From Phallusia mammillata (taxonomy: Eukaryota): 64,000 nt of DNA. The notes beneath the pieces were generated by a model. The model ran no database searches. It was not told where the DNA came from and saw nothing but the letters and a program-made list of their open reading frames with translations. A program made the translations under genes and the position numbers. This document shows, piece after piece, positions 1,777-60,176 of this stretch (the first letter of the stretch is position 1; each line of letters opens with the position of its first letter). The stretch lies in NCBI GenBank assembly GCA_965637545.1, contig OZ281499.1, forward strand, positions 26,846,001 through 26,910,000. Direction: 5' to 3'.

Positions 1777-4189
1777 ATGTACAAGCTGACTTTGTTGTTC
1801 GTGTTTTGTTTGATGTTCATTTCCATTGTTGGACATACCTCGTCATTAACTTCGCATAATGGAGGGTTGGTATAGTTGATTTAAACCTTTGGTGGTTCAT
1901 TACGATGTTTTATTATGAGGTATGACAAAACTTTGCCACCCGAGAACAAAACAACGGAAAATGTGACAAATCTCCAGCCGTGTCACTACTTAAAAAAATT
2001 AGCACTTTGTCTTGAAATACTGCTTACATTTTATATCATACTGATGTAGGCTACGCAGTTTGCTCATTTTCCTTATTGATGATCTGTATCCTTATGTTTA
2101 AAACAAGTCAAAACAAATCCAACATATTTGCAAACCTGATCAGAAACTTTGCGCACAGATCTTCCGTACCTTGGGATGAGGACGGAGATGAAGATTCGGA
2201 ACAACTTTCGGAGGAAAACTTGGATCAGTTGACCAGAGGTGAGATGTGAGATTGGCACAAACTCAAAACAGCTTGGTCCTGAAATATGAATTTGTGAAGT
2301 TCAAAAATGAATCAAATAACTTTATGTAAACAATAAAGTATATAAAGCTCCATTGATGCCATAATCGATTTGTTCGAAATGATATGTTAATTACACTGGG
2401 CAACAAAAAAATATTTTTTTACTGGTGTCTGTAATGTTTTAAGTGATTTTGACTAATTCTAGTGCCCTGATTTCAAAAATGCAATCGGTTTATCTGTATC
2501 ACGTCTAGTTTTCCTGTTATGGTACATCCACGTTTGAAAAACGTGTATACACTAGTGAAACTGGTTTTGAGTATTTTATTTGGAATTGCAGCGTGTGCAA
2601 AGCTGACTCCGGTTAATAACTGAGCATAGCACAGACTTAAGTATCTACTTCACGAGTTTTATTACAAGCAACATAACAAACAGACGAACACAGATAACTT
2701 ACTTTTACAAGTTCAACGTAACATCAAGTTGACGAGCGATTAGTACATTAAGCGAATAAAGACAGAATATAATATTCGCACTTTGACCAGAATTTTAACG
2801 GTTGAAAGATAGAATCAGAATTGGAATGGAATGAATCTCAATGTTTGTGGCGTGGTATTTATAAGTCCGATATTTTACTTAATCAAGATTAGAATCGATA
2901 CGACGATACGATACGAGAGATAAGAAATTGGACACACGGGGATTAGAAATCAATGTACCAAAGTCATTACGCTTGATCGACTCAAGGTTAATAGGGTCGA
3001 CGAAAAGGGAAAAATATAAATTACAAAAAGCAATCTCGAGAAAAGAACAGATGTTTGCTGATTAATCCGGAGAGACCACGTGATTTGAACACGTGATTTG
3101 ATGCAGAATTAACATTATTTCAAGAACAATATTTCGAAATTAATTTTAAATGTAACAGGTGGACACTCCTAACAAACAAAATTCAACACAAAAAAACAAA
3201 AAAATGTTTCAAGTTTGTAAGTTATTAGGTATAGGCCTACACATGTACTTTGGTAACTTTCGAAACTGAGTGGCAGCAATATCGTCCCGTTTAATTGACC
3301 AACAGCAGTTAGCTAGGACCACATTATTCCATCTTCCCTGACACGTTTCGTTTTACTGATATCCTGTTGGAATCTTTCAGCTTAATTCTCATCATTTATA
3401 TCCCCTACGTTATAAGGGAAGTGTAGCTTTATACTTATTTTCGTACTCAATTTTTCAGACCGCTTAACAACTTAGTTATGTACTCTTTCTATTAATTTCA
3501 GTCCCTTTCTACTGTTTTTGTCCATTACTGCAATATTCCAATCAACATTAGGTAAGTGGAGCCCATTGCTTGTCCTAAACCCCTAAAGCCACATCGAAGT
3601 GTGCAAGATATGCACATTTGATACGGATCTCTTTTTTCTTTTTAGTTGTGTTGTATGGGTATTCACCAGTAATGTAGCATAAACCATCTTGGTAATTCAT
3701 GCAACACCTTTAGATGACCTAGCCACTATTAATTTTAGTTTTACCACCTTGCTTTACTAGTCTGAAAATCACTCCATAAAACATGTATAGTTTAAAGTTA
3801 CCGCTAGCCTGCACCAACCATTTTTAGACAGAGCATAAGCATAGAACGCATATTCATGCTATGAAACTGACTGCACTGTAGGAAATTAATGTGTTTAATG
3901 TAACAAAACTTTAACAAGCACATAAAAGCATGATTTAAAAGTCATTAAATCAATATGGTCATAAATTTAGATTTTGTAAATAACTTAAAAAGTTGACCTG
4001 GTTAAAGAAAACCGTAATGATTTTTGAAATCAGCACCCCAAAATTAGTCAATATCAATTTAAACATTAAAGACACCAAAAATTGTGTTGGCCAGTGTTAT
4101 TCCTGTTTAAAGTAAATAAAAATTGTTTGTCAGATGTCGAAGAGCTGGATTTGGATTTTCTAAATGAAACGGGATTACAAATGGATTAA
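1777..4189 (+). CDS. Secreted acidic prepropeptide, subtype D (D2), 74 aa; exons 1777-1865, 2159-2238, 4134-4189
   Basis: Spliced product MYKLTLLFVFCLMFISIVGHTSSLTSHNGGSSVPWDEDGDEDSEQLSEENLDQLTRDVEELDLDFLNETGLQMD*. Canonical splice sites; intron 2 is enlarged by a 1.7-kb transposon. Confidence 0.75.
2394..4096. mobile_element. Non-autonomous CMC/Chapaev3-like DNA transposon in D2 intron 2
   Basis: Termini CACTGGGCAACA / TGTTGGCCAGTG, 3-bp TTA duplication, subterminal inverted repeats (gactaatt...ctgatttcaaaaat). Absent from the homologous intron of D3 (~59550-59600). CAC ends with a TWA TSD fit Chapaev3. Confidence 0.7.
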
Positions 4190-5095
4190 AGAAACTTTGA
4201 AGGTTGTCGGTGGAATTTTGGATATTGTTGTCGTTTTCTTTAAATGTAACAAGTGCAAGAATGTTTGCATTTACTAAACGAAAATAAATACAGAATCATG
4301 TAAATATTGTTTGTACATTGTATCGATTTAGGCCCAGTATTATCAGTTTACCAGCAAATGCTAATACATGTGTGTGGTGGTAGTAAAAAAACACGCTTTT
4401 TCTTAACGCAACTTAAAACCTATGGCTAGACAGTTAAGAACAGGGTTGCACAGCAAACAAGGAACGGGATGCAAAACCGCTGTAGCAAGTAACTTATGCA
4501 TTGTGCAGGATTCAACTCAACTGTATAATAAATGTACAAGTAGACTTTTCTATCTTGCTTTATGTGCAATTGCATTGTTTGCAAAAATTCCGGACGTTTT
4601 AAATTTTGCTGATGAGCAGTTTTGATGAAAACTTAACACGTCAACGCAAATGTTTTTTATTGTTCCCAAAGTTTTAGAAAAAAGTAATTGTTAGAGGAAA
4701 ACTCTCTGTCGTATGTTTTAAGGAAAGTGGCAGTAAAAAAGTCTTTGTTTAGTTTTAACCCGTCAGTTTGAAGCGGTTGTTTTAGATTTTGCTGACGAAT
4801 AGTTTCGATGAAAACTTTAAACGTCAACGCAAATGTTTTTTATTGTTTCCAAAGGTTTCAATAAAGTGATTGTTTGGGGAAACTGTTTGCCGTATGTTTT
4901 AAGGAATAGTTGCAGTTAAAAAAGTCTTTGTTTAATTTTTACTCGTCGGAAACAATGATAAACATTAATTAAGTCGATTTCAAATAGCATTGAGGAAACA
5001 AAAAACACCTTAAGCACATAGATTACTTTCAAATCCGCTCAAAATTATGAAAAAGGTATTTCATTGTTTTTAATATTAGCAGCGAGACAGAAGAG

Positions 5096-5960
5096 ATGAC
5101 AAAGTTAAGTTTGTTGCTTGTCGTTTGTTTGTTAGTTGCAATGTTGGTTGATCCAGGACACAGCAAGAAGAAAAACAGAAAGAAAGCCACGGGTATATCT
5201 CCTATATTGGGAAGCAGCTACGGAGGGTGAGATGGTTTGTAAACAAGGATTTTTAAACATTTTCGTGTTCGGGATTTATGGGACTTGTTGTAATTTCGTC
5301 TGAGCTATAAGTTATTGTGGTAAATCAAGAGTATTCTGTCATGTGATGCTACCGATTAGATTTCACCACAAAAATGTTTTAGTCCCGCACACATATTTGT
5401 AAGACGGACCGGGTTTGTGAAGACGACAATTTTAAATAAAACTGACTTGACTTTGCCAAACTTCGTAAATTTCGGGCTTATATGAATTCAAATTCGGGAA
5501 GGGTTTTGGTTTGGACTTTTTCGGGCCAGCCGTCTACTCCACAGTCTCAAACTGTTTGTACAAGTGTTGGAGATCTGTGATTGAAATATCTGACCCAAAC
5601 CGAAAATTAAAACGGTGTATTTCCGGTAGCGATGTGCAGAATGAAATTTACTTTTGACACCAACTTGTATTTTGTAGTGGTGATTCAGATCAACTGGAAA
5701 AAGAAGACGCTCGAGAAAAACGAGGTAAACGTCACTGAGTAAATCTGAACCAAAATACAAGAGAGTTCAGTTAGTTGCATATCGGTTAATATTACATTCT
5801 GGATAATCGCAACAAGGTTGGAAATTATATTCTTAGCATGTGGCAAAAAGTTATCTTCGTTTGAACCAAAAGTAAGTTGCATCAATCAAAACATCTAAGC
5901 ACAATAATTTTTATTTCATCGCGTTTTCCAGACATTCGAAGCCAAATCAAAAAGAACTAA
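5096..5960 (+). CDS. Secreted prepropeptide, subtype C (C1, A-type exon 1), 68 aa; exons 5096-5226, 5678-5724, 5932-5960
   Basis: MTKLSLLLVVCLLVAMLVDPGHS-KKKNRKKATGISPILGSSYGG-GDSDQLEKEDAREKR-DIRSQIKKN*. Phases 2/1; exons 2-3 homologous to 26022-26282 and 57785-58125. A TAC>TAA change shortens exon 3 relative to the paralogs. Confidence 0.65.
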
Positions 5961-6340
5961 GCAGAGACACCCGGAGGAGCATTGTGAAGTCACTATCTGA
6001 CCAATCAGATTCAAGGGCGCGCATTTTGAAATGTCCCAAAAAATAAAAAATAAAATCAGCACAATGTGAGATTGTTGTTGAGTGAAATAATTCTGAAAAT
6101 GGGTCTGACGAGTCTAACGACGACTGCTCAAAATATGTGGCTTACGCAAAAAAAGTATGTTTGTATCTGGTGGCTTTATCGAGACGGAAATAACTGCGCA
6201 GATTGAGATGGTAATACAGTTAAAACTTTACAGCAGTATTTGACAAAGTCCACATTGTCACATCCCATGAAAACACAAACATGAGTTGGAAACGGGATGT
6301 TTATCAAACTTTCATGTGGATTTCACATCACCACTTCCTG

Positions 6341-6846
6341 TATATAAGTTGAGTTCGCTTCGGTGCAAACTTCCAACAATACATTGTGACATATGTTGGT
6401 TCGGGATGAAAAGCAAGTGATCAAGTTTAATCTGTTAGTCCGCAGAAATGGTTTGCAACATTGCAGTGAGTTGTCGGTGTGAATCACCAAGTATCAAACA
6501 ACATCACCAAAACAGAGTTGTTTTCTATTACAAGGCAGTACATTTTGTTTGTTAGTTCTTGTCTTGTGTGTAACTGCGTGAACAAATGTTGGGTTGTTAA
6601 TATCAACAACAGTTGTTTACAAAGTTGGTTGCTTGTTGAGAAATAGACGATGTATTAAAAAAATTCTTTAGCTTCCAATAACGGGTTTCCTGCTAACTTG
6701 TTGCATTAAACCACGACAAATAAGTAAGCCGATTTCAAATAGCATTGAGGAAACAAAAACAGCGCTACCCCAGCTTAAACACATAAATTACTTCTAAACC
6801 AGCTCAAATTATGAAAAAGGTATTTCATTGTTTTTAGTGTTAGCAG
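6341..6846 (+). promoter_or_regulatory. Putative TATA box and 5'-UTR intron of A-type genes
   Basis: TATATAA at 6341-6347, donor-like CA|GTGAGT at 6466, acceptor ttagcag| at 6846, 13 nt before the ATG. The same block precedes other A-type copies (~27826, ~52260 minus, ~57420 minus). Confidence 0.35.
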
Positions 6847-6859
6847 CGAGACAGAAGAG

Positions 6860-7411
6860 ATGACAAAGTTAAGTTTGTTGCTTGCCGTTTGTTTGTTGGT
6901 TGCAATGTTGGTTGATCCGGGACACAGCATGAAGAAATCCCCTATATTGGTGAGCGTCAATGGAGGGTAAGATGGTTTGTAAACACAAATTACAAGAATT
7001 GAATTTGCTTGCAACTGTCAGGAAATGTACAACCATGTTATAGGTGATCCAAATATTTTGCTTAAAACTTTTCCGCAGGGTTTCTATTCCCTGGGATTTC
7101 GAAAACAACGAAGATCTTGAAATGTTCGAAGATCTTCTTAGAGGTAACAAGTGTTGCTTACAAGATCTCACTTGAGGCGTTTGCAGTTTGTAATTTTTCC
7201 CATATTAAGTAAATATATCCGCAATGCTGTGGTTTAAACAACAAACTATAAATCTTCCCAGTGATATTAAATTTCCTCTTAAATACTTTTGTCAGGAAAT
7301 CGAACCCATAACTCCACGATTACAAAACCGATGGCATAGAATTAAACAAATATTTTATTTCTTGCAGATTTCAAAGATGAACTGATTGAAGAAGACAGAA
7401 TGAAAGGATAA
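6860..7411 (+). CDS. Secreted prepropeptide, subtype A (A1), 71 aa; exons 6860-6966, 7079-7143, 7368-7411
   Basis: MTKLSLLLAVCLLVAMLVDPGHS-MKKSPILVSVNGG-VSIPWDFENNEDLEMFEDLLRDFKDELIEEDRMKG*. GG|GTAAG and AG|GTAAC donors, pyrimidine-rich acceptors. Confidence 0.8.
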
Positions 7412-8646
7412 ACTGAAAATACCGAAGTTGCCTTTATTCTGATGTGACACCTATTTTGGAAACTTAATAAAATTATTTATGTGCGGTTAATTGTACGCTG
7501 TGCTGCAATGTAAACATATTTGAACAACGATTGCTGAATTTAATAAAGCCATAAAACAAAACAAAAACGTGTTTGAAGTTTACGTAAATATGCATCACAG
7601 ATATACAAGAACATTTATGTTGAATGTAATCTTTTCATGTGAAAGCCGAATAGAGAGACTTAGACTGAAATGTAGGCCCTAAATATCAGCAGCAAACCTA
7701 TAGTGCAACCTATAGTGGATTTAGAGATATAAGGAAAGTAGACACCTACCGAAAGTTTGCGGAACATCATGCGGTGGAAGTGCTGGAAGTTGGTCGTGTC
7801 AATTGTTTGTGGTTCCTCACAAATATTAAACAACATCAACAAACCAGAGCTGTTTTGTATTGGAAGGCAGATCTGTGGTTTGGAGGCCCTTTCCTTTTGC
7901 CTGGAAGTACTTACTCTGTCCCTTGGCAAAGTGTGTCACACACAGCCTGTGTTGAACAAGACCCCTCTGCTTCCACTTGAAACAAGAAGTACAAAATTAA
8001 TTATATTCTCAATAACATGTAAAGCATTGCTATGTTTTAGCTAGAGTCATGTATATTTGTGATTGGACTTTTTACTGCTGGTAACTCCTTTTCTTGCACA
8101 AAGCAATCCAACTATAATTATACATCATCCGTGTTGTAAATCTGAATATTCAACTCAAACTTCGTTTACAACCTGTACTCATGGTGACAACAGTGATTGT
8201 TCAAACAACTGCACTAATATGTATTCTATATACACAATCTATCTGCCAGTTATAATTTCAATGAATATTTGTAATTTGATAAAACGTCATTATATAGGTT
8301 AAGTATTTACAATTATTGTTGCAATTCAAACTAATCTTTTCTCCGTTCGAGTTACAAATGGAAGCGCAGTTTAGTTGCAACAAAGACACCAACCAAGAAT
8401 GTCATTAGTTAAACGACGAACCAATCGAGAACCACAAGAGCCAGCGTCATTAAAATATTAATTTGTGCTGCGTGCTCAGCACCAGATGTGGTTGTTGTTG
8501 CTGTAGTGATTGTAGGAGTTGTTGTTGCTGTTGTGGTTGTAGGTGTTGTTGTTGCTGTTGTGTTTGTAGGTGTTGTTATTGCTGTAGCGGTTGTAGGTGT
8601 TGTTGTTGCTGTTGAGGTTGTAGGTGTTGTTGTTGCTGTAGCGGTT

Positions 8647-22344: not shown

Positions 22345-24145
22345 CATTGGTTCCCAAACTTTATCTACTCGCGTACCATTTTTTTGTTCATGCAGCGTTC
22401 TCGTACCACCTACAATAATTGTTAGAAAACCCTAGAATTCACAAATAAAAAATGATAGGCAAAATGTTTAATGAATACCATTGAATGAGATAATTAAAAC
22501 CCTCAAGTCAAAATTAACAAAACCACAAGACAATTTTAATGAGATGGATGAAGTTGTTTTTTCTCGACCAGTTGGTCGATGCGAGGAATCACTTTGCTGA
22601 CAGCGCATCGAATGTCATGTCCAGGCGCAACAAGACGGTTCCGTTTCTTCGATTTAATAGTCATCATAGCAGAGAACCCCTGCTCGCACTCCCACGTAGA
22701 CGGAAAAATTAATAACTGGGGAACAGCATGATTGGCTAGCGTAGGATACGATGACACCATACTCAGCCAGAAGTTTATAGGACAACATTCCTTGTGCATC
22801 GTTTTTGCTGTCTCATCAGCTTGAATGTCTATTAGCTCCTCTTGTTCCCCGGTTCCCACAGGCACATCGGCTGGATCAACGAAGAACGGGTTCGCGGAGT
22901 AAGCACAGCATGCAAAGTCCGGGAAGTAATGCATCAATTCAGTCTTGAGTTGTGAAAGATGACAGACAATTTCTTCGGAAATTTCGCATAGACATAGACG
23001 GAGCCCCGTCTGTTGTGCATCCAACCAACTTTCCCCAGTCCAATTCATTCAGTCTAAAAAATCGTTAACAATGTTAAAAATATCCTTTCCTCTTGTTGTA
23101 CTGGGAAGATCCTGGCACATAAGTAGCTCTGTCTTGACAGAATTATCTTGCGTAAAACGAACATAAACAAGTAACTGACAGCAGTTGGTTACGTCCGTTG
23201 ACGTCCAGTTGAATTGAAAACCCAAACTTTGAGGATTTAACTACCGCAATTACTTGGTCAGCGATATCGACTGACATCTCCTCTATTCGATTCTTCACAA
23301 TGTTGTTAGATAGGGGCACACTATCAAGCTTTGCAACCGCTTCCTCTCCGATCACTTGTCTAACCAAGATCTTCGCTGCTGGCATTATGAGAGACTCTGC
23401 AATTGTATGCGCCTTCATGTTTTCAGCCACCAGGAGGGAGACTTCATACGACGCTTTAACAATGCCCCTTTTCCTCTGGTAAATAGTGCCAGTTTTGTCC
23501 AAGCGTTACCGCTTAACATTCTCGCCAAGTCGCTGAAAGTAACTGGCATCTCGGTCCTTGTTGCTAGCATGAGTTGTCTCCAGATGGCGTTTGAGCAGGC
23601 TGGGTTTCATTGCTGCATTAGCAAGAGTCTTCATGCATACTACGCACTGCGGCAGTAACTCTCCTCTGTGCTCGATAGCTATGAACCCGTAATCTGGGCT
23701 ATACTTTCGTTTTGACATGTTACTAAACTTTAGCCTTTAGTAACCAACGGCTCGTAAATATTAAACAAAAATTAGTCAAACTTTTACCGCCCTCGCTACA
23801 GTGCTACTGTCAACACAACTACTAGCTTATTACAAAAACTATAACTTTAAGGATTTATTACGTCGTAATAACGGATTCATTACGTCGTAATGAACCTATT
23901 TCGTCACAAAGAAACCCTGCTTTACAGTTCAATGTGTCAATACACCAAGGAATTAGAATTTAGTAGAGAATATAGTATGAAATTTCACGCTCTACGTGAC
24001 TTGTGTGAATTAAAATAATGCTTACGATAATCACTAGAAGATCATTTGCGATCGTTTGGTGTGAACTTAATGAGTTGCTCGCGTACCACCCTGTAGACCT
24101 TCGCGTACCACTAGTGGTACGCGTACCATAGTTTGGGAACCACTG
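22345..24145 (-). mobile_element. Internally deleted hAT transposon (Buster/Charlie, ZBED8-like transposase remnants)
   Basis: TIR ca(g/t)tggttcccaaact and perfect 8-bp TSD ccctagca. Minus-strand ORF pieces encode a BED finger (PQCVVC...MKPSLLKRHLETTH), the DUF4371-type region (KAHTIAESLIMPAA...FSIQLD) and the hATC dimerisation motif (FPSTWECEQGFSAMMTIKSKKRNRL). The catalytic middle is deleted. Confidence 0.92.
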
Positions 24146-25063
24146 CCCTAGCACAACGAAGTTAAAGTATTTTTCAGTTTTACCACTACAGCTTTTAGGA
24201 TTCATTTCACCTAAATATTATTTGCTTGGTAACGCAAATCAATGATCTAAGAGCGGTTTGTGACATCACAGACAACTCCAAGATATGAATTATGCGCAAA
24301 CAATTGCTTTCATTGTTGCTTGTGTTGAAATAAACAAGCCTGGAACACGCACGTAAGATTTCAAAGAAAACCTCCTGAAAGTCGACGAAAATAGAGCCGT
24401 CAACCAATAAATAACCAGAAACTTTGGAAAGAGCAAGAATGATAAAGTGGTGTAGCGTGCAGTATCCATATCTTTAAAAGCGTTTTGGCATCTGTATCGG
24501 ATCTTGGACTTTTAATTCAAAACATATCGAACTTTGGACTTTAATACTTTATTTCAAATCATTTACTTGCATGCCCTAATCGTGACGCATTTGCCCCGGC
24601 CAAACTCGGTCAAACCTCGCCTTTTTGTCTGCACAAAAGCTTGACCAGCTATTAAACCTGTTTAAACCTGTTTTCTAATCACTGCACCGGTCATAAACTT
24701 GATCAAGGCTATATTTGTATCTCTAATTTACGTGTTAACGGGAACCATGTCTTAAACGGCTTCCAGCTATGTTACATTTGACGTTTCTATAAGCAATTTA
24801 ACGAATAATTACGGTTTAGAACTTAGTTAATCTTCTCGGGCGTGCGTTTTCACAACTATGCCCGCATAACAATATGTGACCTGAACGCTATAAAGATCGG
24901 CGTATTTCAGACTTAAAGTCAGTAGAGTTACCATAAGAGTTCATTAGTTACAATAACAGTGCTTTGGTGTAGCTCACGCGTTGGCGTTGTGACTTTTGTG
25001 TTGCGTGTTTAACCGCAAATTGCGCTGTCGTATTATGCTTTGTCGATAATATAGATGGGGGAA

Positions 25064-25581
25064 TGTTACTGAAGTGTTGCGTCATTTAGGTTTAGTTAAC
25101 AACATTAGTTTGTTTAATTAGGGAGTCAGATATACGGAAGTGTTATCAATTGTCTACTATAGGGTCAGTACAATATTGGTGACCCCGACATGATGAAATT
25201 GATTTCCGCGCAGTTGGCCTTCTGATAATATCGCTGTTAACAACGCCTAAATTTATGATGCAGAGAACTGCTAGCTTCGTTCCTGTTTGTGTAAGCTCTG
25301 CGACGCATTGTTATGATGTGCCTGTTCCGTCTGTATGGATTAGGTCGACGAGATTGTATTATTCTGACGTTGAGTTGGGCACGAATTATTCTGTTAAGCC
25401 GTCACCTAGTGACCAGGCCGCATCGTTGTTTATTCCGCCTAGCCAGACAACGTGTGCACCGTATTCTACGCCTCGTTATCCAGTTGTTCCTGCGCCTTTT
25501 GGGGTTGGTGAACTTAATTTTTCTCCCATGTGGACAGATGCGGTAAAATTTTGGTTTTACAAAAAACTTATGATAAATTAA
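25064..25581 (+). mobile_element. Gypsy-like LTR remnant: ~109-bp LTR (25064-25172), tRNA-Trp PBS (25177-25194), gag-like ORF fragment
   Basis: TGTTAC...GTACA ends preceded by purine tract GGGGGAA. PBS TGGTGACCCCGACATGAT matches the known tRNA-Trp PBS TGGTGACCCCGACGTGAT at 17/18. The ORF is homologous to 41811-42338 (minus) and ends in a FSPMW...FWF gag-like motif. Confidence 0.65.
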
Positions 25582-25687
25582 GTTGTTTTGGTGGTAAAAT
25601 CGTAGCAGGATAGTTGTAATTAAAAAATGTTTTTATTTTGTATTTGTTAGTTTGTATTTTCTTTGTTTTTAATGTTAGGCTTAAGAG

Positions 25688-26282
25688 ATGACAAAGATAA
25701 GTTTGTTGCTTGTCGTTTGTTTGTTAGTTGCAATGTTAGTTGATCCAGGACACAGCATGAAGAAGAAAGACACTGCCCCGCATCCAAACTCTGTATTGGG
25801 AAGCAACAACGGAGGGTGAGATGGTTTTGTAAACAAGGTTTTGTAAACATTTTAGTGTTCGGGATTTTCCGGGCCTGTCCTTTACTCTGCAGTCACAAAC
25901 TGTTTGTACGAGTGTTGGAGACCTGTGATTGAAATATCTGACCCAAACCGGAGGTTAAACGGTGTATTTCCGGCATTGTTGTTTTGTGCAACTACGTTTG
26001 ACACCAACTTGTATTTTGCAGTGGTGATTCAGATCAACTGAAAAAAGCAGTCGCTCAAGAAAAACGAGGTAAACGTCACTGAGTAATTTATTTTCTTAGA
26101 ATGTGGTTATAAGTTGGTCAAACGACCTGCTGAGTTTAAACCAAAAAAGATCACATAAAAATACCTCATTCATATATCTCATTCCATCAATCAAAACATC
26201 GAACATAATCAAATTTATTTCATCCCTTTCAGTCATTCGAAGCCAAATCGAAAGCAACTACGCAGTGCCACCAGGGAGTTGA
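25688..26282 (+). CDS. Secreted prepropeptide, subtype C (C2, A-type exon 1), 74 aa; exons 25688-25815, 26022-26068, 26233-26282
   Basis: MTKISLLLVVCLLVAMLVDPGHS-MKKKDTAPHPNSVLGSNNGG-GDSDQLKKAVAQEKR-VIRSQIESNYAVPPGS*; canonical splice sites, phases 2/1. Confidence 0.7.
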
Positions 26283-26411
26283 AGTCACCGTTGACTGACC
26301 AATCAGCTTCAAGGGCGCGCATTTTGAATTGTCGCCAAAATAAAATAAATAATCAAATCAGCTCAATGTGAGATTGTTGTTGAGTGAAATAATTCTGAAG
26401 AGGGTCTGACA

Positions 26412-27590
26412 TAGGGTTGCCATATTTTATGATACACAATCCCTGACAAAATTTATCTCAGTTGCGTTAAACCAGTGGTTCTCAAACTTTTTCGTTATTT
26501 TCTCTAAACGGTCTCTTTGCCATTATTTCGAGGGCTTGTTGTCCTTGAGCCTGAATGTGTTTTTCAGAAAAAGGAAAATTGATTGCAGGATTTTAGCTAG
26601 TTATGTAAAGTTCTGCATAACAATGATCCAAATCTGACACTACAGACAAGACAAGAACATTACCATTGTGCGTGAACAACAGCATTTTTGTTAGTTGACA
26701 TGCAATAAAGCCTATTGTTTGGCAATTGAGACGGTCGATGATTCTCAATTTCACATTGATTGAGAATCATCGATCGTCTCACAGAATTACTTCCAGCTTT
26801 GTCTCACGGAGCCCCAAAGGACCCAGTTTGAGAACCGTTGGGTTAACCTTTTTTGCGATCCAATTACTTCTATTGCGGAATAAATTTAGAATATTCGGAA
26901 TTCACAGTGACACGAGAAAACGTAAGATACAATACTCTGATCCTTGTTAATTAACTTTGTGCTTCTGTTTAGTTAAGTTTATTAGGCTTAGCTTACTAAC
27001 CCTTGCCACTCTAAAGTCGCCAACCCTTGCCACTCTGAAAACTATTCGGACCAATTTCAAATTGTCACAGAAAACAACAACACTGGGAGCCGCCCTTTTA
27101 AAGATCTTTTTAATTTGAAATACAATGCAACTAGTGTAAAAACGTTTCTATATCTCATGACATTCGACTTTTTGTTGTTAGTTAATTCCTTGCATATTAG
27201 GTACACAGTTAAAGCAAATAAAACTTCCCACGTTCCCACGTAGCATCGAACGCTTTGTTTTCTTGAGACGCGGATTTTTATTTCTGTATTTAACGCGTAT
27301 TGTTAGACAATTAGTAACAAACAGGTATTGGTACGCGCGCACACACAGTACAAAACGAAACAGTAACGCTAACCTGCCCGCCGCCAGTTTACCTCTTTAC
27401 GTTTCATGGTATAGACACGGTTGTAGCTACGTAATAGAGATTTTGTCCATTGATACATTTATTTCATAGTATACCTATATATTTTCTTAAATTCCTGACT
27501 TTTAAGTACATTTTAACATTTCTCCCTGACGCAGATTTAAACACTAAATTCCCTGCATGTCAGGGAAAATCCTGACGTATGGCAACCCTA
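26412..27590. mobile_element. hAT-type MITE (TAGGGTTGCCA family) with an internal Charlie-type segment (26473-26840)
   Basis: TIRs as at 13203-14121, TSD gtctgac(a/g). The homologous site near 57650-57665 is empty (ggtctgacagcggctg on the minus strand). Confidence 0.8.
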
Positions 27591-28327
27591 GTCTGACGGC
27601 GGCTGTTCACAGTTTGTGGCTTACGTAAGAAAACGCATGTTTGTATCTGGTGGAAATAGGCTTTATCAAGTCGGAAATAGCTGCATATATTGAGATGGTA
27701 ATATAGTTAAAACTTTACAGCAATATTTGACAAAGTCCACATTGTCACATCCCATGAAAACACAAACATGAGTTGGAAACAGGATGTTTATGAAACTTTC
27801 ATGTGGATTTCACATCACAACTTCCTGTGTATAAGTTGAGTTCGCTTCGGTGCAAACTTCCAGCAATACATTGTGACATATGTTGGTTCGGGATGAAAAG
27901 CAAGAGATCAAGTTTAATCTGTTAGTCCGCATAAAGTGTTTGCAACATTGCAGTGAGTTGTCGGTGTGAATCACCAAGTATTAAACAACATCAACAAAAC
28001 ATAGTTGTTTTGTGTTGGAAGGCAGATCTGTGGTTAAGAGGACGTTACCTTTGCCTGGAAGTAGATTCTGTTTATTAATTCTTGCCTTGTATGTAATTCC
28101 ATGAACATATGTTGGGTAGTTAATATCAACAACAGTTTATTTACAAAGTTAGTTGCTTGTGCAAACTTGTTGCATTAAACCATGACAAATATTAAGTAAA
28201 CCAATTTCAAATAGCATTGAAGAAACAAACAGCGATGCCACAGCTTAAACGCATAGATTTTTTTTAAACCCGCTCAAATTATGACAAAGTACTTCATCGT
28301 TTCTGTGTTTCCAGCGAGACAGAAGAG

Positions 28328-28892: not shown

Positions 28893-29832
28893 ACTGAAAA
28901 TACCGAAGTTGCCTTTATTCAGATGTGATCCGTAGTTGGGAAAGTTAATAAAATTATTTAAGTGCGGTTATTTATACGCTGTGCTACAATGTAAACAGAT
29001 TTAAACAATAATTGCTGAATTTAATTAAAGTCAACAAAACAAAACAAACGTCTTTGAAGTTTTTGCAAATGTGCATCACAGGTATAAAGAACATTTATGT
29101 TGAATGTAATCTTTTCATGTGAAAGCCGAATAGAGAGACTTAGACTGAAATGTGGGCCCTAAATATCAGCAGCAAACCTATGGTGCAACATATAGTGGAT
29201 TAAGCAACATAAGGAAAGTAGACACTTACCGAAAGTTTGCGGAAGACCAGGCGTTGAAAGTGCTGAAAGTTAGTCGTGTCAATTGTTGGTGGTTCTTCTC
29301 AAGTATCAAACAACATCAACAAAACTGTTTGCTAAACTCATTGTTAAAACGGGAAGTGCATACGGACGTTTGGTATGGATGGGCGATTTGAACGAGCTGC
29401 AAGCACTGTTTTGTATTGGAAGGCAGATCTGCGGTTAAGAGGGCGTTTCCTCTGCCTGGAAGTAGATTATGTTTATTAGTTCTTGACTTGTATGTAATTC
29501 CGTGATTAACATATGTTGGGTCGTTAATATCAACAACACTTTGTTTACAAAGTTAGTTGCTTCGCAAGAAATGGACGATGTGTTAGAATTATTATTGTTA
29601 GCTTCCAATAACGGGTTTCCCTTCAAAATTGTGCATTTAACTGTAACAAAAGTAAATTAACCCGATTTCAAATAGCATAAGTAAAACAACAACAGCTGTA
29701 CCACAGTTATATCACGATGCTCTTGAGCCCGCTTAAATTAGGAAAGTGTATTTTATCGTTTTGTGTGTTTGCAGCGAGTTAGACGCACGGCGTAATGTTT
29801 CTTATGTTTACAGTTGATTCCAAGTAGGAGAG

Positions 29833-44530: not shown

Positions 44531-45525
44531 TCAAATATCTTCATTGTTGAGTTCTTCCTCGAAATCTACATTAAAAAATGTTTTAAACTTGCAATATTTT
44601 TTTAAAGTGAAGTAATAGGTTCGAACCCAAGTCCATGCAGGAAATGTACCGTATCATGATACGTATGTTCTGTGGAACATTCTAATTATGAATTGCATAA
44701 GAAACATTTCGTTGGTGCAATACTCGACTGTATCACGACTTTAATTAATTGGTAATAATAAATGATAATGCAACTTTTAGATGTCGGACTTAGGTTTTAC
44801 ATTTTGTTGGTGCAATATTTAACCATGTTGAGCTTTATAAAAAAAAACGTAAACGCCTCATTTAAAATGTCGAAATCAGGTTTTAACAATTCTGAACCTT
44901 CAAGAAGATCTTCCAACATTTTCAGCTTCTTTTTCTCGTTGTTGCTTCTTTTAAAATCCCATGCTACAGTGATCCTGTGAAAATTTCACGCAAAATACTC
45001 GATTACTTTAAACTACAAAGACAACGTGCAATTGAAAATGTTTTAAGTCTTGGAAACATTTAGATCAGGGGTGTGCAACCTTTATCATGGTGCATCTAAA
45101 TTAAATTTCCAGGATTAGATCGCGGGCCGCACCTTTATATAACACAAAATGATTTTAATTTATTGCATATTCTACCTGCTTTATTGTCCGGCCGCAGAAA
45201 TAATCTGCTCGTATAATAATTAAACTCGTTTGTTAGTACATTTGATTCTAGTCGAATATTGTCAGGTAACAGAAAGCAGCACCGGGCGCATTAATCTGCT
45301 CGAAAATGTATAATAATTGGACTCGTTTGCCAGTACATTTGAAATCTCAGCGTCTCTGCTGGCCGCACATTCTTTAGTTAAGGGCCGCATTTGGCCCGCA
45401 GGCCACAGGTTGCACACCCCTGGTCTATTCCACCACATGAACTTACCCTCCGTTGACACTTCGAACTTTTACAGCCAACTTCGCTTTTTTTCTCTTCTTG
45501 CTGCATCCTGGATCAACCAAAAAAT
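44531..45525 (-). pseudogene. Subtype B copy B2, 5'-truncated
   Basis: Exon 1 remnant ends at 45447, exon 2 is 44974-44898 (ITVAWDFKRSNNEKKKLKMLEDLLE), exon 3 is 44565-44531. The start codon and most of the signal peptide are replaced by D-type sequence. Confidence 0.75.
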
Positions 45526-45544
45526 GGTGAATTAGGCACAATTT

Positions 45545-45911
45545 CAGTTTTCCTCCGAATGTTGTTCCAAATCTTTATCTCCGTCCTCATCCCAAGCTAC
45601 GGAAGCTCTGCGCAAAGTTTCTGATCAGGTTTGTAAATATGTTTGAATTGTTTTGATTTGTAAAGTTTAGAAAATTGAGAAAACATAAAGCGGTAAGCAA
45701 ATGTTGAAAACATAAACAGTATTTGAAGACTAGACTTTACAGCGGTAACACGAACTGGAGATTTGTCATTATTTCATTTCCTAAAACATTGAAACAACTT
45801 AACCACCAAAGGTTTACATAAACTAACTAACCCTCCATTGACTGAAGTAAAAGGTCCAACAATGCAAGTGGACATCAAACAAAACACGTACAATAAAGTC
45901 AGCCTGTACGT
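45545..45911 (-). pseudogene. Subtype D copy D4 (ATG>ACG, exon 2 truncated)
   Basis: Exon 1 starts ACG TAC AGG CTG...; exon 2 (ASVAWDEDGDKDLEQHSEEN) breaks off and joins the B2 exon 1 remnant. Confidence 0.7.
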
Positions 45912-46624
45912 CTTTGTTTATATGATCTGAACCTATAAAAGTAACGTTTTGTACTTAAAGCTAAAAAAGCTAAACTGTCACAAATAAAACTGAGGCTTTC
46001 CTCCGCCAAATGCCCAAGTTAGAAATGCACAACAAACTTTCGCAACATAACGCAACTTTGTGTTATACCACGTCTGTATAAATGGTTGGAAGTCTACACC
46101 ACCGCTTACAACAGCTGAGCGCGTTCTGGCTGCTTTGCGTTAGCTGCAGTGCGTTGGATATTTATCCACCATTTGTTCCTTTTGTTGTTTTCGCGCTTCA
46201 TGACGTGCCGACGTTGCGCAGGATGACTGTTTTAGTGCATTTGTGTTGCTACGATTTCAACAAAGGGACTGAACTCCATTGAACTCAAACATCTCAAATC
46301 CTATTTATCGACCACGAAGCTTACAATACTTGCATGCGTGCTGCAATTTGGCATTGTTAGATTTTATTGAAGCTCAGACCAAAATCATCCAGCAACACAA
46401 CAAGATACAAATCAATTGAAGTAGTTTTTTGATATTATTCCGTATTTGTTTACGAAACCAAACAAAAGTTCAAAATTTGAAGAATATTACTCCATTGCAA
46501 AAACATGAAACCAATCTGATTAACAAAACATTAACGGTGGATAAACAAATAAATCCAAGTGTAAATTTAAAAATTTCTGGTGTACCACAATTATTTTTTT
46601 CAGTTGGATTTATATTGTCAGAAA

Positions 46625-51765: not shown

Positions 51766-52649
51766 CTCTTCTGTCTCGCTGCAAACACAATCATAATTTG
51801 AGCGGATTTGGAAAAAATCTATGCGTTTAAGCTGTGGCAGGGCTGTTCAATGCTATTTGAAATCGGCCTAATTAATATTTGTTCTGTTATTGAAAGCTAA
51901 CAAAAGATCTTCCAATACATTGTCTATTTCGTACCGAGCTACTAACTTTGTAAACAAACTGTTTTTGATATTAACGGCCCAACATATGTTTACGCAGTTA
52001 CTTGCAAGACAAGAACTAATAAACACAATCTACTTCCAGACAAGCAGACCACACAACCGCATATCTGCCTTACAACACAAAACAACTCTCTTTTGTTGAT
52101 GTTGTTTAATACTTGAAGATTCACACCGACAACTCACTGCAATGTTGCAAACACTTTCTGCGGACTAACAGATTAAACTTGATCACTTGCTTTTCATCCT
52201 GAACCAACATATGTCACAATGTATTGCTGGAAGTTTGCACCGAAGTGAACTCAACTTATACACAGCAAGTTCTGATGGGAAATCCACATGAAAGTTTGAT
52301 AAACATCCCGTTTCCAACTCATGTTGGATATTTGTGTTTTCATGGGATGTGACAATGTGAACTTTGTCAATTATTGCTGTAAAGTTCAAGGGTATACAAC
52401 CCTCGCGGTGGACCAAATTAAATTTCCGTGATTATATCGCGAGCCGCACACCATGTGATTTTACTTTGTTGCACATATTACTAACCTTCACATTGTATTG
52501 AAGACGCATTATTGTCGCATAAACGATCAGCTTCAAAAATATAAAACATTTGGATTCGTTTGCCAGTAAATTTGAATTCCCAGCGTTTCTGCTGGCCGTA
52601 CATCCTTTGGTCAATGGGCCTCATTCGCAGGTTGCACACTTCTGATTTT

Positions 52650-56913: not shown

Positions 56914-57784
56914 CTCTTCTGTCTCGCTGCAAACACAATCATAATTTGAGCGGATTTAGAAAAAATCTATGCGTTTAAGCTGTGGTAGGGCTGTTTTTTC
57001 TGCAATGCTATTTGAAATCGGCTTAATTAATATTTGTCCTGTTATTTAAAGCTAACAAAAGATCTTCCAATACATTGTCTTTTTCGTACCGAGCTACAAA
57101 CTTTGTCAACAAACTGTTTTTGATGTTAACGGCCCCACATATATTTACGGAATTACATGCAAGACAAGAACTAATCAACACAATCTACTTCCAGACAACC
57201 AGACCACACAACCGCATATCTGCCTTCCAACACAAAACAACTCTGTTTTTTCCAACACATTGTTTAATACTTCGTGATTCACACCGACAACTCACTGCAA
57301 TGTTGCAAACACTTTATGCGGACTAACAGATTAAACTTAATCTCTTGCTTTTCATCCCAAACCAACATATGTCACAATGTATTGCTGGAAGTTTGCACCG
57401 AAGTGAACTCAACTTATACACAGGAAGTTGTGATGTGAAATCCACATGAAAGTTTGATAAACATCCTGTTTCTAACTCATGTTGGATATTTGTGTTTTCA
57501 TGGGATGTGACAATGTGAACTTTGCAAAATACTGCAGTTAAGTTTTAACTATATTACCATCTCAATCTGCGCAGCTATTTCCACTCGAAAAATCCTATTT
57601 CCATCCGATACAACTTGCGTTTTCTTGCGTAAGCCACATACTGTGAACAGCCGCTGTCAGACCTATTTCAGAATTATTAAACTTGACAACAATCCCACAT
57701 TGAACTGATCTGATGATTTATTTTATTTTAGGTGACAATTCGAAATGGGCGCCCTTGAAGCTGATTGGTCAAACCACGGTGACT

Positions 57785-58637
57785 TTATCCCCCTGGTGGC
57801 CGTGCGTAGTTGTTTTCGATTTGACTTTGAATGTCTGGAAAACGCGATAAAATACAAATAACTGTGCTTAGATGTTTTGATTTCGATCTAAATACAGTAT
57901 TTTTTATGCAACTTATTTTTTTGTTTTAAACGCAGCAGGTCGATTGACCAACTTTTCAACCTCATGCTAAGATTACAATTTCCAATCTTGATGCGATTAT
58001 CCAGAACATAATATTAACCGTTATGCAACTAACTGAATCCTCTTGTATTTCGGTTCAGGTTCACTCAGTGACGTTTACTTCGTTTTTCTCGGTCGTCTGC
58101 ATCTTCCAGTTGATCTGAATCACCACTGCAAAACACAAGTTGGTTTAAAAAGTAGCACAACACAACGCTGCCGGAAATACACCGTTTTGATTTCCGGTTT
58201 GGATCAGATATTTGAAGGCTTCCATCACAAGCACAAACAGTTTTTTTCCTGCAGAAATGAGGACAGGCCCGAAAAATCCCGAACGCGAAAGTATAAACAA
58301 AAACCCGACCCGATTTCGGATTTATAACAGGTCGACATTTATGACACAAATTTGGCAAAGTCCAACTAAAAGCCAAACCCGAACTGTATTGCAACTACAT
58401 GTGTGCGGGAATAAAAACATTTTTGTGGTTAAATCTAATCGGTAGCAACACACGATAAAATACTTGATTTACCACAAGCATTTATAGCTGGGTTTGTAAC
58501 TTTAAAAAAATCCTGTTAAATTGAATTATTTACTACTTGATGAATCTTGACTTTCCTGGTTTGACGACAAAAGCCGACCTCGCAAGGTTTGTGACGACCA
58601 AAACGACGAGCAGAAGAATCAACGTATGTTTATTCAT
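57785..58637 (-). CDS. Secreted prepropeptide, subtype C (C3, own exon 1), 65 aa; exons 58637-58537, 58125-58079, 57834-57785
   Basis: MNKHTLILLLVVLVVTNLARS-AFVVKPGKSRFIN-GDSDQLEDADDREKR-NIQSQIENNYARPPGG*. The intron 1 donor (GTAGTA) is weak but in phase, and intron 1 is homologous to those of C1/C2. Confidence 0.65.
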
Positions 58638-59500
58638 CTTTGCAGCAGATTATGGCTGATGACTTGACAATTTTTATTTTTAGTTGAAACCTAAGTGAAG
58701 TTGATGCAGCTAAACATAAAAGTTATCACCAAATTTTTCTTGTTGTTTAAACAAATGTAATCTTGGAAGTTTAACAACAAATTTTTAAAGTGTAGCTTCA
58801 ATGATCCATTATTGTGACCCTACTCGTTTTGCGCTTCATGCCGTTCTAATACTACACAACCACACTGGGTTAGTGATTTTATTGGTACAAATATGCCGCT
58901 ACGAACTTTTTATCACCCAATATAAACTTTTCATTAGTTTGTTCAAAGTTTTCAAATCGGCAAAGTTAGTAAAACTGCCAACTGCATCAGCACCAAGCAA
59001 CCGCTTCAAACTGACGAGTTAAAATTAAACAAAGACTTTTTCAACTGCAAGTATTCTTAAAACATACGGCAAGCAAGCAGTTTTTCCCAACAACCACTTT
59101 TTCTGAAACCGTAAAATTTTTCCTTAAAACGTACGGCAGACAGTTTTCTCCCTAACAATTAATTTTTTCGCAACATATGGAAACAATGAAGCAGAATAAT
59201 ATGCATGGTATTGTTGCAACCAACGCAATTGCATGTTCCTTTTCCTTGTTTGCTGTGCGACCCTGTTCTTAAGCGTCTAGCCATAGGATATAAAGTTGCG
59301 TTAAAAAAAAGGGTGACTGCCACCTCACACATGTATAAGCATTTGCTGGTTGACTGGTAATACTGGGCCTAAATCGATACAATGTACTAACAATATTTAC
59401 ACGATTCTGTATTTATTTTTCTTCCGTAAACACCAAACATTCTTGCAATGGTTACATTTAAAGTCAACGACAACAATATTCAAATCCATCGACAATCTAT

Positions 59501-60176
59501 TTATAATCCCAATTCGTTCAGAAAATCCAAATCCAGCTCTTCGACATCTGACAAACAATTTTTTTCTTTAAATAACTAACATGTCATTCCGAACAAATGG
59601 ATTATGACATCAATGTAACTTTATATACTATATATTGTTTATGTAAAGTTATTTGATTCATTTTTACACTTTACAAATTCATAATTAAGGACAAAGCTGT
59701 TTTGAGTTTGTGCACATCTCACATCTCACCTCTGGTCAACTGATCCAAGTTTTCCTCCGAAAGTTGTTCCGAATCTTCATCTCCGTCCTCATCCCAAGGT
59801 ACGGAAGATCTGTGCACAAAAGTTTGTGATCAGGTTTGTAAATATTTTGGATTTGTTTTGACTTGTTTTAACATAAGGAAACATATCATCAATAAGGAAA
59901 ATGAGCAAATTGCGTAGCCTACAATATATAAAATGTAAGCCGTATATCAAGACAAAGTGTTAAGTCTTTTAAGGAGTGACACGGCTGGAAATATGTCACA
60001 TTTTCCGTTGTTTTGTTCTCGGGTGGCAAAGTTTTGTCATACCTCATAATAAAACATCGTAATAAACCACCAAAGGTTTAAATCAACTATACCAACCCTC
60101 CATTATTCGAAGTATACCCTCCAACAATGCAAGTGAACATCAAACAAAACACGAACAACAAAGTCAGCTTGTACAT
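59501..60176 (-). CDS. Secreted acidic prepropeptide, subtype D (D3), 68 aa; exons 60176-60097, 59809-59730, 59547-59501
   Basis: MYKLTLLFVFCLMFTCIVGGYTSNNGGSSVPWDEDGDEDSEQLSEENLDQLTRDVEELDLDFLNELGL*. Confidence 0.78.

What the first reader, a model, noticed from the sequence alone, without database searches (positions are those of the whole stretch)
5096..5960. Exon-1 swapping builds chimeric genes (C1 and C2 versus C3)
Seen: intron 1, exon 2 (GDSDQL...EKR) and exon 3 are homologous among C1, C2 and C3. C3 has an unrelated exon 1 (MNKHTLILLLVVLVVTNLARS...) and a D-type upstream region, whereas C1/C2 use the A-type signal exon (MTKLSLLLVVCLLVAMLVDPGHS). At C1 the D-type flank switches abruptly to A-type upstream sequence at ~4945. 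Shared intron phases make the exons interchangeable. Inference: modular shuffling by ectopic recombination or gene conversion generates new mature-peptide/propiece combinations.
Basis: partly seen in the sequence, partly recalled or inferred. Interest (0 to 1): 0.7.

Follow-up and report, generated by a model that had tools for sequence, protein, structure and literature searches.

The report
Signal-exon swap between sea-squirt peptide genes
In a sea-squirt cluster of tiny secreted-peptide genes, two copies carry the export-signal exon of one subfamily joined to the body of another, an ordinary kind of gene chimera whose DNA breakpoints are still readable, though nothing shows that the chimeras are expressed.

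Summary
C1 (5096-5960) and C2 (25688-26282) join an A-type signal/cationic-peptide exon to the intron 1, exon 2 and exon 3 of the C subfamily. C3 (58637-57785, minus strand) has the same body behind a different first exon (MNKH...).

C1 matches C3 at 69-93% in every segment except a 330-base cassette (4948-5277). There identity is 41.8%, the level of unrelated DNA. That cassette is 86% identical to the next gene downstream, A_6860.

- C3 is not a chimera. Its first exon is found only with C bodies, at three loci in two clusters 8.5 Mb apart, so it is the native C exon.
- The "D-type flank" is the last exon, 3' end and spacer of the preceding D gene.
- C1 and C2 are the derived chimeras. They share one 3' junction, so they have one origin.
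- Neither junction has flanking homology. This points to illegitimate, probably duplication-linked, rearrangement rather than homologous gene conversion.

Weak points: C1 and C2 both lack the conserved promoter/leader module of normal A genes, C1 has a premature stop in exon 3, and I found no transcript or homologue evidence.

This is a new member of a known kind. The scan noted a comparable mosaic (a lectin-receptor cluster) elsewhere in this genome.

The parts
4106..4464 (+). S1: last exon of D2 (4134-4189), its 3' end, and the start of the D-to-C spacer. This is the 'D-type flank'.
   Evidence: It is 82-90% identical to C3 59572-59242 and to 734-1079 behind D1. D2 exon 3 was translated.
4596..4947 (+). 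S2: two tandem copies of a spacer unit (4596-4764 and 4779-4947). D-type homology ends at 4947.
   Evidence: The two copies are 85% identical to each other. They match C3 59233-59013 and D spacers. In C3, C4, C5, D2 and D3 the spacer continues for 275 more bases (S3), which C1 lacks.
4948..5095 (+). 5' junction and the A-type upstream part of the cassette. This is the 3' end of the leader intron of A-i genes, with a pyrimidine tract and AG acceptor just before the ATG.
   Evidence: See the alignment. In normal A-i genes homology runs unbroken from element T to the ATG, so the break at 4947/4950 is specific to C1.
5096..5226 (+). C1 coding exon 1, A-type. It encodes a signal peptide plus a lysine-rich peptide ending in GG, and ends with a phase 2 donor GG|GTGAGA.
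   Evidence: The signal part is 97% identical to C2. The cassette groups with A_6860 at 85/93 support.
5227..5277 (+). 3' junction. About 21 bases of A-type intron start (5227-5247) are followed by a roughly 30-base copy of the C-type mid-intron motif 'p-m' (ending in GTTCGGGATTT).
   Evidence: It is 94% identical to C2 25816-25867. The exact 11-mer occurs only in the C1, C2 and C3 introns within the window. See the alignment.
5278..5677 (+). C-type intron 1. It joins the C-type intron at about its 14th base.
   Evidence: It is 74% identical to C3 and 90.6% to C5. C1+C5 are sisters at 98/97 support.
5678..5724 (+). C1 exon 2 (GDSDQL...EKR), with a phase 1 donor.
   Evidence: It is 91.5% identical to C2 and 87% to C3.
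5932..5960 (+). C1 exon 3. It ends at a TAA where C2 and C3 read TAC, so the protein is 7 residues shorter.
6231..6460 (+). Element T: a conserved TATA-containing module with a conserved GTGAGT donor at about 6465. It is the likely promoter plus non-coding leader exon of the next gene, A_6860.
   Evidence: Eleven copies are 92-97% identical while neighbouring DNA is 70-85%. The donor is conserved. T runs continuously into the A-i genes.
6860..7412 (+). A_6860, the next gene downstream and the closest relative of the C1 cassette. It is the likely donor lineage.
25607..26282 (+). C2, the second A/C chimera.
- Possible S2-end remnant at 25607-25638.
- A-type homology runs from 25658.
- Exons are 25688-25815, 26022-26068 and 26233-26282.
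- Intron 1 goes straight from the A-type start into the C-type mid-intron and lacks the 5' part.
   Evidence: A dispersed repeat (44 or more copies) ends near 25562.
57785..58637 (-). C3, the C gene with its native first exon (MNKH...). Exons are 58637-58537, 58125-58079 and 57834-57785.
   Evidence: The first exon has only two other copies in the genome, both joined to C-type intron 1.
58738..59572 (-). S1-S2-S3 spacer upstream of C3. It holds the last exon and 3' end of D3 and the D-to-C spacer. It is collinear with D-D spacers up to 58738.

Best explanation
The window holds a tandem cluster of small three-coding-exon genes for secreted peptide precursors, in subfamilies A, C and D. They share intron phases 2 then 1 and so share one ancestral gene structure.

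The native C gene is a D-gene spacer (S1-S2-S3), then the MNKH signal exon, then the C body. C3, C4 and C5 have this form.

In the lineage of C1 and C2, a piece of about 300 bases replaced the end of the spacer (S3), the MNKH exon and the first ~13 bases of intron 1. The piece holds:
- the last ~146 bases of the A-i leader intron, with its splice acceptor;
- the A-type signal/cationic-peptide exon;
- the first ~21 bases of the following intron.

It was copied from a neighbouring A-i gene, in the A_6860 lineage. The joins were made by non-homologous, microhomology-type repair. They were probably linked to a local duplication that did not respect gene boundaries, and they left a displaced copy of a mid-intron motif at the 3' join.

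The result is an in-frame precursor: A signal and lysine-rich peptide, then the C acidic piece, a KR site and the C tail.

Shown: the mosaic, the breakpoints, the direction of the swap, and the common origin of C1 and C2.
Inferred: the repair mechanism and the order of events.
Not shown: that either chimera is transcribed or made.
For: Mosaic structure:
- C1 vs C3 is 69-93% identical in eight segments but 41.8% across the cassette. Background is 42.9 +/- 2.8%.
- The cassette is 86.3% identical to A_6860, with background-level flanks on both sides.

Direction of the swap:
- The MNKH exon has only three copies in 240 Mb. All are joined to C-type intron 1 behind S3, including one in a second cluster 8.5 Mb away.
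- The A cassette sits on A bodies in 15 or more copies and on C bodies only in C1 and C2.
- S2-S3 is contiguous in C3, C4, C5, D2 and D3 but broken in C1.

Single origin:
- C1 and C2 share the first 51 bases of intron 1, including the displaced motif, at 94% identity. Neighbouring intron is 82%.

Local parents:
- The cassette is sister to the adjacent A_6860 (85/93 support).
- The 5' part of the intron is sister to C5, 7.4 kb upstream (90.6% identity, 98/97 support).
- The gene order C5 - C1 - A_6860 is the order a boundary-crossing tandem duplication predicts (PMC5460883).

Frames and phases.
Against: - No RNA evidence was available.
- C1 and C2 both lack element T, the conserved promoter/leader module in front of every normal A-i gene. 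C2 has a transposon about 125 bases upstream of its ATG.
- C1 has a stop where C2 and C3 read Tyr, which removes the conserved tail.
- The history is not one clean event. A D-gene array (D0-D1-D2) lies between C5 and C1. The spacer tree does not pair C1 with C5.
- Relative to the distance to C3, C1 is closer to C5 (in the 5' part of intron 1) than to C2 (in the 3' part). A second exchange or later conversion is therefore needed.
- Whether the C1 or the C2 form of the 3' junction came first is unresolved.
- Only one assembly was available, so read support for the junctions could not be checked.
Confidence: 0.7

Rival explanations
1. Homologous ectopic gene conversion, the first reader's mechanism: an A gene converted the 5' end of a C gene through aligned paralogous sequence.
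For: - The donor-like gene A_6860 lies 1.7 kb away in the same orientation and is intact.
- The signal-coding 69 bases are far more uniform among copies (97% for C1 vs C2) than surrounding DNA. This fits ongoing conversion among signal exons after the swap.
Against: - No homology flanks the tract. C1 4779-4947 vs A_6860 upstream is 46.2%, and C1 5253-5500 vs the A_6860 intron is 43.7%. Both are at background.
- The junctions show only a few shared bases, and the 3' join carries a displaced 30-base motif. Conversion does not produce that.
Confidence: 0.1
2. Reverse direction: the C body originally carried the A-type exon, and the MNKH exon with the S3 spacer was the invader, so C3, C4 and C5 are the chimeras.
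For: - A, D and C share gene structure, and the A signal exon is the commonest in the cluster.
- No outgroup species could be searched.
Against: - MNKH never occurs without a C body.
- MNKH plus C body is present in two clusters 8.5 Mb apart, whereas A plus C body is confined to one cluster and shares one junction.
- C1 retains S1-S2 of the same spacer but lacks S3. That is a broken version of the arrangement seen in five other places.
Confidence: 0.08
3. Assembly artefact: the join at about 4945 is a misjoin of reads from different paralogues.
For: The region is a dense array of paralogues, and no reads could be inspected.
Against: - Both sides of the join differ by 11% or more from every other copy in the assembly, so no other locus could have supplied the reads.
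- The same A/C architecture and the same 3' junction exist at a second locus, C2, 20 kb away and 15-18% diverged.
- C2 may also keep a remnant of the S2 end upstream (27/33 matches; 0 of 2000 shuffles reach the score).
Confidence: 0.04
4. The chimeras are real DNA rearrangements but dead debris of a churning cluster. They are not genes that add peptide combinations.
For: - Both lack element T.
- C1 has a premature stop in exon 3.
- Exon 3 (74-76% identical) is no better conserved than the introns.
- The C subfamily is decaying. C4 has an in-frame TAG in exon 2 and has lost exon 3, and C5 is truncated.
- Other dead fusions exist, such as D exon 2 joined to an A-iii exon at 45489-45661 with ATG changed to ACG.
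Against: - C1 and C2 keep the ATG, all four splice sites and open frames after 15-18% divergence.
- The signal part is 97% and exon 2 is 91.5% conserved, against 82-86% in neighbouring non-coding DNA.
- Every coding first exon in the cluster has an acceptor just upstream, so transcription may not depend on T.
Confidence: 0.4

Closest known systems
Chimeric genes made by tandem duplications that cross gene boundaries (Drosophila; Rogers, Shao and Thornton 2017, PMC5460883)
   Same: - The 5' end comes from the downstream parent and the 3' end from the upstream parent.
- The chimera lies between its two closest relatives (C5 - C1 - A_6860).
- The breakpoints are in non-coding DNA and lack homology.
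   Different: - This case is old (9-18% divergence), not polymorphic.
- A D-gene array now separates the upstream parent from the chimera.
- A second junction (4947/4950) cuts off the donor's promoter.
- No expression data are available.
'Export exon' hypothesis for frog skin antimicrobial peptide genes (discussed in PMC13128954)
   Same: - A highly conserved signal-peptide exon is combined with different downstream coding parts.
- The signal part is far better conserved than the mature peptide (97% vs 69.5% between C1 and C2).
   Different: - That paper states the shuffling step has not been demonstrated in frogs. Here both DNA junctions are preserved.
- The family here is an unannotated sea-squirt family with no detectable homology to frog or other known peptides, and no activity data.
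Nabaecin of the wasp Nasonia: exon shuffling between abaecin and navitripenicin through a conserved intron (PMC2853521)
   Same: An immune-type small-peptide gene was built from two families through a shared intron position and phase, then duplicated.
   Different: In Nasonia the inference rests on 41-56% similarity without breakpoints. Here the parents are neighbours at 86-91% identity and the joins can be read to within a few bases.
Ascidian cationic peptide precursors such as styelins, clavanins and Ciona peptides (recalled from memory; Ciona survey in PMC7387483)
   Same: The layout is the same: signal peptide, short cationic peptide ending in Gly, then an acidic C-terminal extension.
   Different: No sequence homology was found. 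This resemblance of layout is a lead, not a test.

Membership tests
Chimeric gene by exon shuffling / boundary-crossing duplication | Adjacent segments of one gene have different closest paralogues | tested here: met
   The cassette is closest to A_6860 (86-89% identity, 85/93 support). The body is closest to C5, C2 and C3. Across the cassette, C1 vs C3 is at background.
Chimeric gene by exon shuffling / boundary-crossing duplication | Breakpoints lie in introns or non-coding DNA and the reading frame is preserved by matching intron phases | tested here: met
   The joins are at 4947/4950 (leader intron or spacer) and 5247-5277 (intron 1). All subfamilies have phases 2 then 1.
Chimeric gene by exon shuffling / boundary-crossing duplication | The chimera lies between its parents: the 3' donor upstream and the 5' donor downstream | tested here: inconclusive
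   The order C5 - C1 - A_6860 fits. However, D0-D1-D2 lie in between, the T tree is unresolved and the spacer tree disagrees.
Chimeric gene by exon shuffling / boundary-crossing duplication | The chimeric transcript is made | not testable with these tools
   No RNA data were available. No protein or ORF is on record.
Homologous ectopic gene conversion | Donor and acceptor are alignable on both sides of the converted tract | tested here: not met
   The flanks are 46.2% and 43.7% identical, against a background of 42.9 +/- 2.8%.
Known antimicrobial or secreted-peptide families | Sequence homology to a described family | tested here: not met
   The first exons have no Pfam match. No protein in the 5.8-billion-cluster search shares enough words with C1 exon 1. 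The signal string appears in no paper.
'Export exon' type peptide gene family | Conserved signal exon, hypervariable mature peptide | tested here: met
   Between C1 and C2 the signal part is 67/69 identical and the mature part 41/59, with indels. See the alignment of 14 A-type exons.
'Export exon' type peptide gene family | The peptides have a defence or signalling activity | not testable with these tools
   This needs synthesis and assay.

The most novel reading that the evidence does not exclude
The A-type signal exon is a true movable 'export exon'. It is an internal exon with its own acceptor and a phase-2 donor. It has been pasted onto another subfamily's body at least once, possibly twice (C2-type and C1-type junctions), and yields expressed new precursors. 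That would make this cluster the first case where the export-exon idea is documented with both DNA breakpoints. A bolder version is that read-through transcripts in this same-phase array also mix signal exons and bodies at the RNA level.
Probability: 0.2. Interest if true: 0.55.

Novelty: new member of a known kind. Interest (0 to 1): 0.35.

Why it matters
Families of defence-type and toxin-type peptides often share a signal exon while their mature parts differ. The proposed explanation, shuffling of an 'export exon', is rarely seen at the DNA level because breakpoints erode.

Here the two parents, the chimera and both joins are still legible within 10 kb. The case therefore shows how such a swap happens: non-homologous joining in flanking introns, made harmless by shared intron phases.

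It also corrects the picture of this cluster. C3 is the ancestral form, and the 'D-type promoter' is the tail of the neighbouring gene.

The value is limited. The mechanism is well known from other animals, the family has no known function, and expression is unproven.

Tried and rejected
- Protein homologue search with C1 exon 1 found nothing.
- Pfam scan of the C1 and C3 first exons found nothing.
- Exact-ORF look-up of the C1 exon 1 ORF in public assemblies, meant to find an independent assembly of the junction, found nothing on record.
- A paper search for the signal-peptide string gave 0 hits.
- A tree of the 11 copies of element T, meant to test whether the C5 and C1 copies are sisters, was unresolved because the copies are 92-97% alike.
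- A tree of 14 A-type first exons, meant to test whether C1 and C2 are sisters, was unresolved. C1 groups loosely with the A-i genes and C2 sits on a long branch.
- Deep homology of the MNKH and A signal exons is weak: 53 of 2000 codon shuffles reach the score. The window used was one base off, which is immaterial for a DNA local alignment.
- Divergence instead of replacement was rejected, because the cassette is at background identity between well-conserved flanks.
- Retroposition was rejected, because the cassette carries intron sequence on both sides.
- I saw no target-site duplication at the joins by eye. This was not tested formally.
- Joined (spliced) protein models were not built or searched. 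All searches were exon by exon.

Full report
**What is there.** Earlier notes of this scan place the window in a sea-squirt genome. I did not test that. The window is G000:C6:26846001-26910000. It holds a dense array of very small genes with three coding exons. I translated each exon separately.

- C1: exon 1 5096-5226 (signal peptide plus a lysine-rich peptide ending in GG), exon 2 5678-5724 (GDSDQL...EKR), exon 3 5932-5960.
- C2: 25688-25815, 26022-26068, 26233-26282.
- C3 (minus strand): 58637-58537 (MNKH... signal, 33 codons plus 2 bases), 58125-58079, 57834-57785.

All splice sites are GT/AG. The first intron is in phase 2 and the second in phase 1. The same is true of A_6860 and of the D genes D1 and D2. 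All searches were exon by exon.

Self-comparison of the window and segment-wise global alignments give these identities for C1 vs C3:

| Segment | Identity |
|---|---|
| S1 spacer | 89.7% |
| S2 spacer | 69.0% |
| 5' part of intron 1 | 73.1% |
| 3' part of intron 1 plus exon 2 | 79.5% |
| intron 2 | 84.2% |
| exon 3 plus 3' flank | 76.2% |
| downstream element T | 93.0% |
| C1 4948-5277 vs C3 59012-58522 (cassette) | 41.8% |

Thirty unrelated 300-base pairs from the same window give 42.9 +/- 2.8%. The cassette region is therefore at background.

The same C1 stretch (4950-5252) is 86.3% identical to the next gene downstream, A_6860 (6705-6992). The DNA on either side of it is at background against A_6860 (46.2% and 43.7%). 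This is replacement, not divergence.

No other locus in the 240-Mb assembly spans the 4947/4950 join. No paralogue is more than 89% identical on either side of it. That argues against a misjoin of near-identical copies.

**What the 'D-type flank' is.** S1 starts inside the last exon of the preceding D gene. D2 exon 3 is 4134-4189 and D1 exon 3 is 753-799. S1-S2-S3 is therefore the 3' end of a D gene plus the spacer that follows it. The same spacer lies between D1 and D2, upstream of D3, and upstream of C3, C4 and C5. In all of those it runs 275 bases further (S3) than in C1. After S3 it is followed either by a D first exon or by the MNKH exon (alignment). C3 having a 'D-type upstream region' reflects only the conserved gene order D - C - A. 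It is not a swap.

**Direction of the swap.** A whole-genome search with the MNKH exon region found just three copies:
- C3;
- C5, 2.3-2.5 kb left of the window (G000:C6:26843514-26843759);
- C4, at C6:18.39 Mb, which is 8.5 Mb away.

All three are joined to C-type intron 1. C4 sits in a second cluster with the same order, C - T - A - A - A. C4 and C5 are dead. C4 has an in-frame TAG in exon 2 and has lost exon 3. C5 keeps exon 1 and about 180 bases of intron and then jumps to element T.

The A-type cassette sits on A bodies in at least 15 copies and on C bodies only in C1 and C2. MNKH plus C body is therefore the native form, and C1 and C2 are the derived chimeras.

**The junctions.**

*5' side.* The spacer reads ...TTTTACTCGTCGG, and A-type sequence follows from AAACAATGATAAAC. 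The two parents share at most a loose 8-10 base resemblance (AACTYGTYG) at that point.

In normal A-i genes, homology runs unbroken from element T through about 245 bases of spacer to the ATG. The C1 break therefore cuts inside what is probably the leader intron. T has a TATA box and a conserved GTGAGT donor about 95-100 bases after it. Each A-type coding exon is preceded by a pyrimidine tract and an AG. The so-called exon 1 is thus most likely an internal exon, and the cassette is an exon with both of its splice sites.

*3' side.* C1 and C2 share the first 51 bases of the intron at 94% identity. About 21 of these bases are A-type. The next ~30 bases copy a motif (ending in GTTCGGGATTT) that lies in the middle of intron 1 in C3 and C4. 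Within the window, the exact 11-mer occurs only in these three introns.

After the motif, C2 continues as C3 and C4 do after theirs, so C2 lacks the 5' part of the C intron. C1 instead continues with the C intron from about its 14th base, and it lacks the motif at its normal mid-intron place.

Two readings fit:
- The first chimera was C2-like, and C1 arose by a second illegitimate join onto a C5-like gene.
- The first chimera was C1-like with a templated copy of the motif at the join. C2 then lost the DNA between the two motif copies, and C1 lost the second copy by slippage.

I cannot decide between them. Either way the shared junction shows one origin for the A-on-C arrangement. C2 may also retain the end of S2 upstream (25607-25638; 27/33 matches; 0 of 2000 shuffles reach the score). 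The rest of its upstream is a dispersed repeat ending near 25562.

**Where the pieces came from.** The upstream-plus-signal part of the C1 cassette groups with its neighbour A_6860 (88-89% identity, support 85/93). The 5' part of C1's intron groups with C5 (90.6% identity, support 98/97), against 73.7% with C3.

The gene order C5 - C1 - A_6860 is the order expected when a tandem duplication starts inside an upstream gene and ends inside a downstream gene. The chimera then takes its 5' end from the downstream parent and its 3' end from the upstream parent (PMC5460883). Junctions with microhomology and short templated inserts are typical of polymerase-theta type end joining, which also makes tandem duplications (PMC7368036, PMC8654963; titles and abstracts only, not read in full).

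I give this specific route about 40%. Three things do not fit a single clean event:
- A D-gene array (D0, D1, D2) now lies between C5 and C1.
- The spacer tree does not pair C1 with C5.
- Relative to C3, C1 is closer to C5 than to C2, although C1 shares its junction with C2.

Later exchange between neighbours is needed under any model.

Homologous gene conversion as the primary event is unlikely, because nothing alignable flanks the tract. It may explain why signal-coding sequence stays so uniform (97% for C1 vs C2, against 82-86% for neighbouring non-coding DNA).

**Are the chimeras genes?** This is unknown.

For:
- Both keep the ATG, all splice sites and open frames after 15-18% divergence.
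- The signal part and exon 2 are better conserved than the introns.

Against:
- Both lack element T.
- C2 has a transposon close upstream.
- C1 has TAA where C2 and C3 have TAC, which cuts off the conserved ...YAxPPG(G/S) tail.
- Exon 3 is no better conserved than the introns.
- The cluster holds other dead fusions.
- No homologue, Pfam family, recorded ORF or paper mention was found.

**Comparison with what is known.** This is an ordinary mechanism, exon shuffling or chimeric gene formation in a tandem array, acting in an unannotated sea-squirt peptide family. The family's layout recalls ascidian cationic peptide precursors: signal, cationic peptide ending in Gly, acidic tail. That resemblance is recalled from memory and was not tested.

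The case is a clean illustration of the 'export exon' idea for secreted peptide families. A 2026 frog study says the shuffling step of that idea has not been demonstrated there (PMC13128954). A weaker, similarity-only case is Nasonia nabaecin (PMC2853521).

The scan has already reported a comparable mosaic in another gene cluster of this genome (lectin receptors, s1-375418) and judged it ordinary.

**Verdict.** This is a new member of a known kind, of modest interest.

Noticed in passing
window 6231-6460; also 27718-27947, 57301-57535(-), 52143-52379(-); L016 6146-6353; L009 957-1189; L010 1025-1251: Element T is a roughly 230-base module that is 92-97% identical in 11 copies, including copies on another contig, while neighbouring DNA is 70-85%. 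It has a TATA box, a conserved GTGAGT donor about 95-100 bases later, and a 10-codon relic ORF (MKSKRSSLIC) resembling the start of a signal exon. It is probably the promoter plus non-coding leader exon of the first A gene in each series. It always follows a C gene or C remnant, or precedes an A-i or D gene.
   Followed up: partly
G000:C6:26843514-26844120 (L015 about 7514-8120; window coordinates -2486 to -1880): C5 is a truncated C gene with an intact MNKH-type first exon and about 180 bases of intron, joined directly to element T. T is in turn fused to the remainder of a D-type first exon (D0, with ATA in place of ATG). These are two more non-homologous joins just outside the window.
   Followed up: partly
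window 45489-46037 (-): A dead fusion: a D-type first exon (ATG changed to ACG) and the first part of D exon 2 are joined to the 3' part of an A-iii first exon.
   Followed up: partly
L016 4883-5603 (G000:C6:18390883-18391603): C4 lies in a second cluster 8.5 Mb away with the same order, C - T - A - A - A. It has an MNKH-type first exon, an in-frame TAG in exon 2, and most of exon 3 missing.
   Followed up: partly
window 24900-25562 and 22536-23048(-): A dispersed repeat with 44 or more copies in the genome ends about 125 bases upstream of the C2 ATG. A nearby ORF has a weak match to the hAT transposase dimerisation domain (E = 9e-4, below the Pfam cut-off).
   Followed up: partly
window 26411-27590: An insertion of about 1.2 kb splits the 3' flank of C2 from its element T. 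In C1 and C3 the two parts are contiguous.
   Followed up: no
L009 1190-1597(-), L010 1262-1488(-), window coordinates -9694 to -9410: Three 5'-truncated C remnants hold exon 3 with or without part of intron 2. Each is followed by T and an A-i gene. Duplication blocks in this family therefore often start inside a C gene.
   Followed up: partly
all coding first exons, e.g. 5070-5095, 1745-1776, 58700-58638(-), 29800-29832: Every subfamily's first coding exon is preceded within about 15-60 bases by a pyrimidine tract and an AG. This suggests leader exons or spliced-leader trans-splicing throughout the cluster.
   Followed up: no
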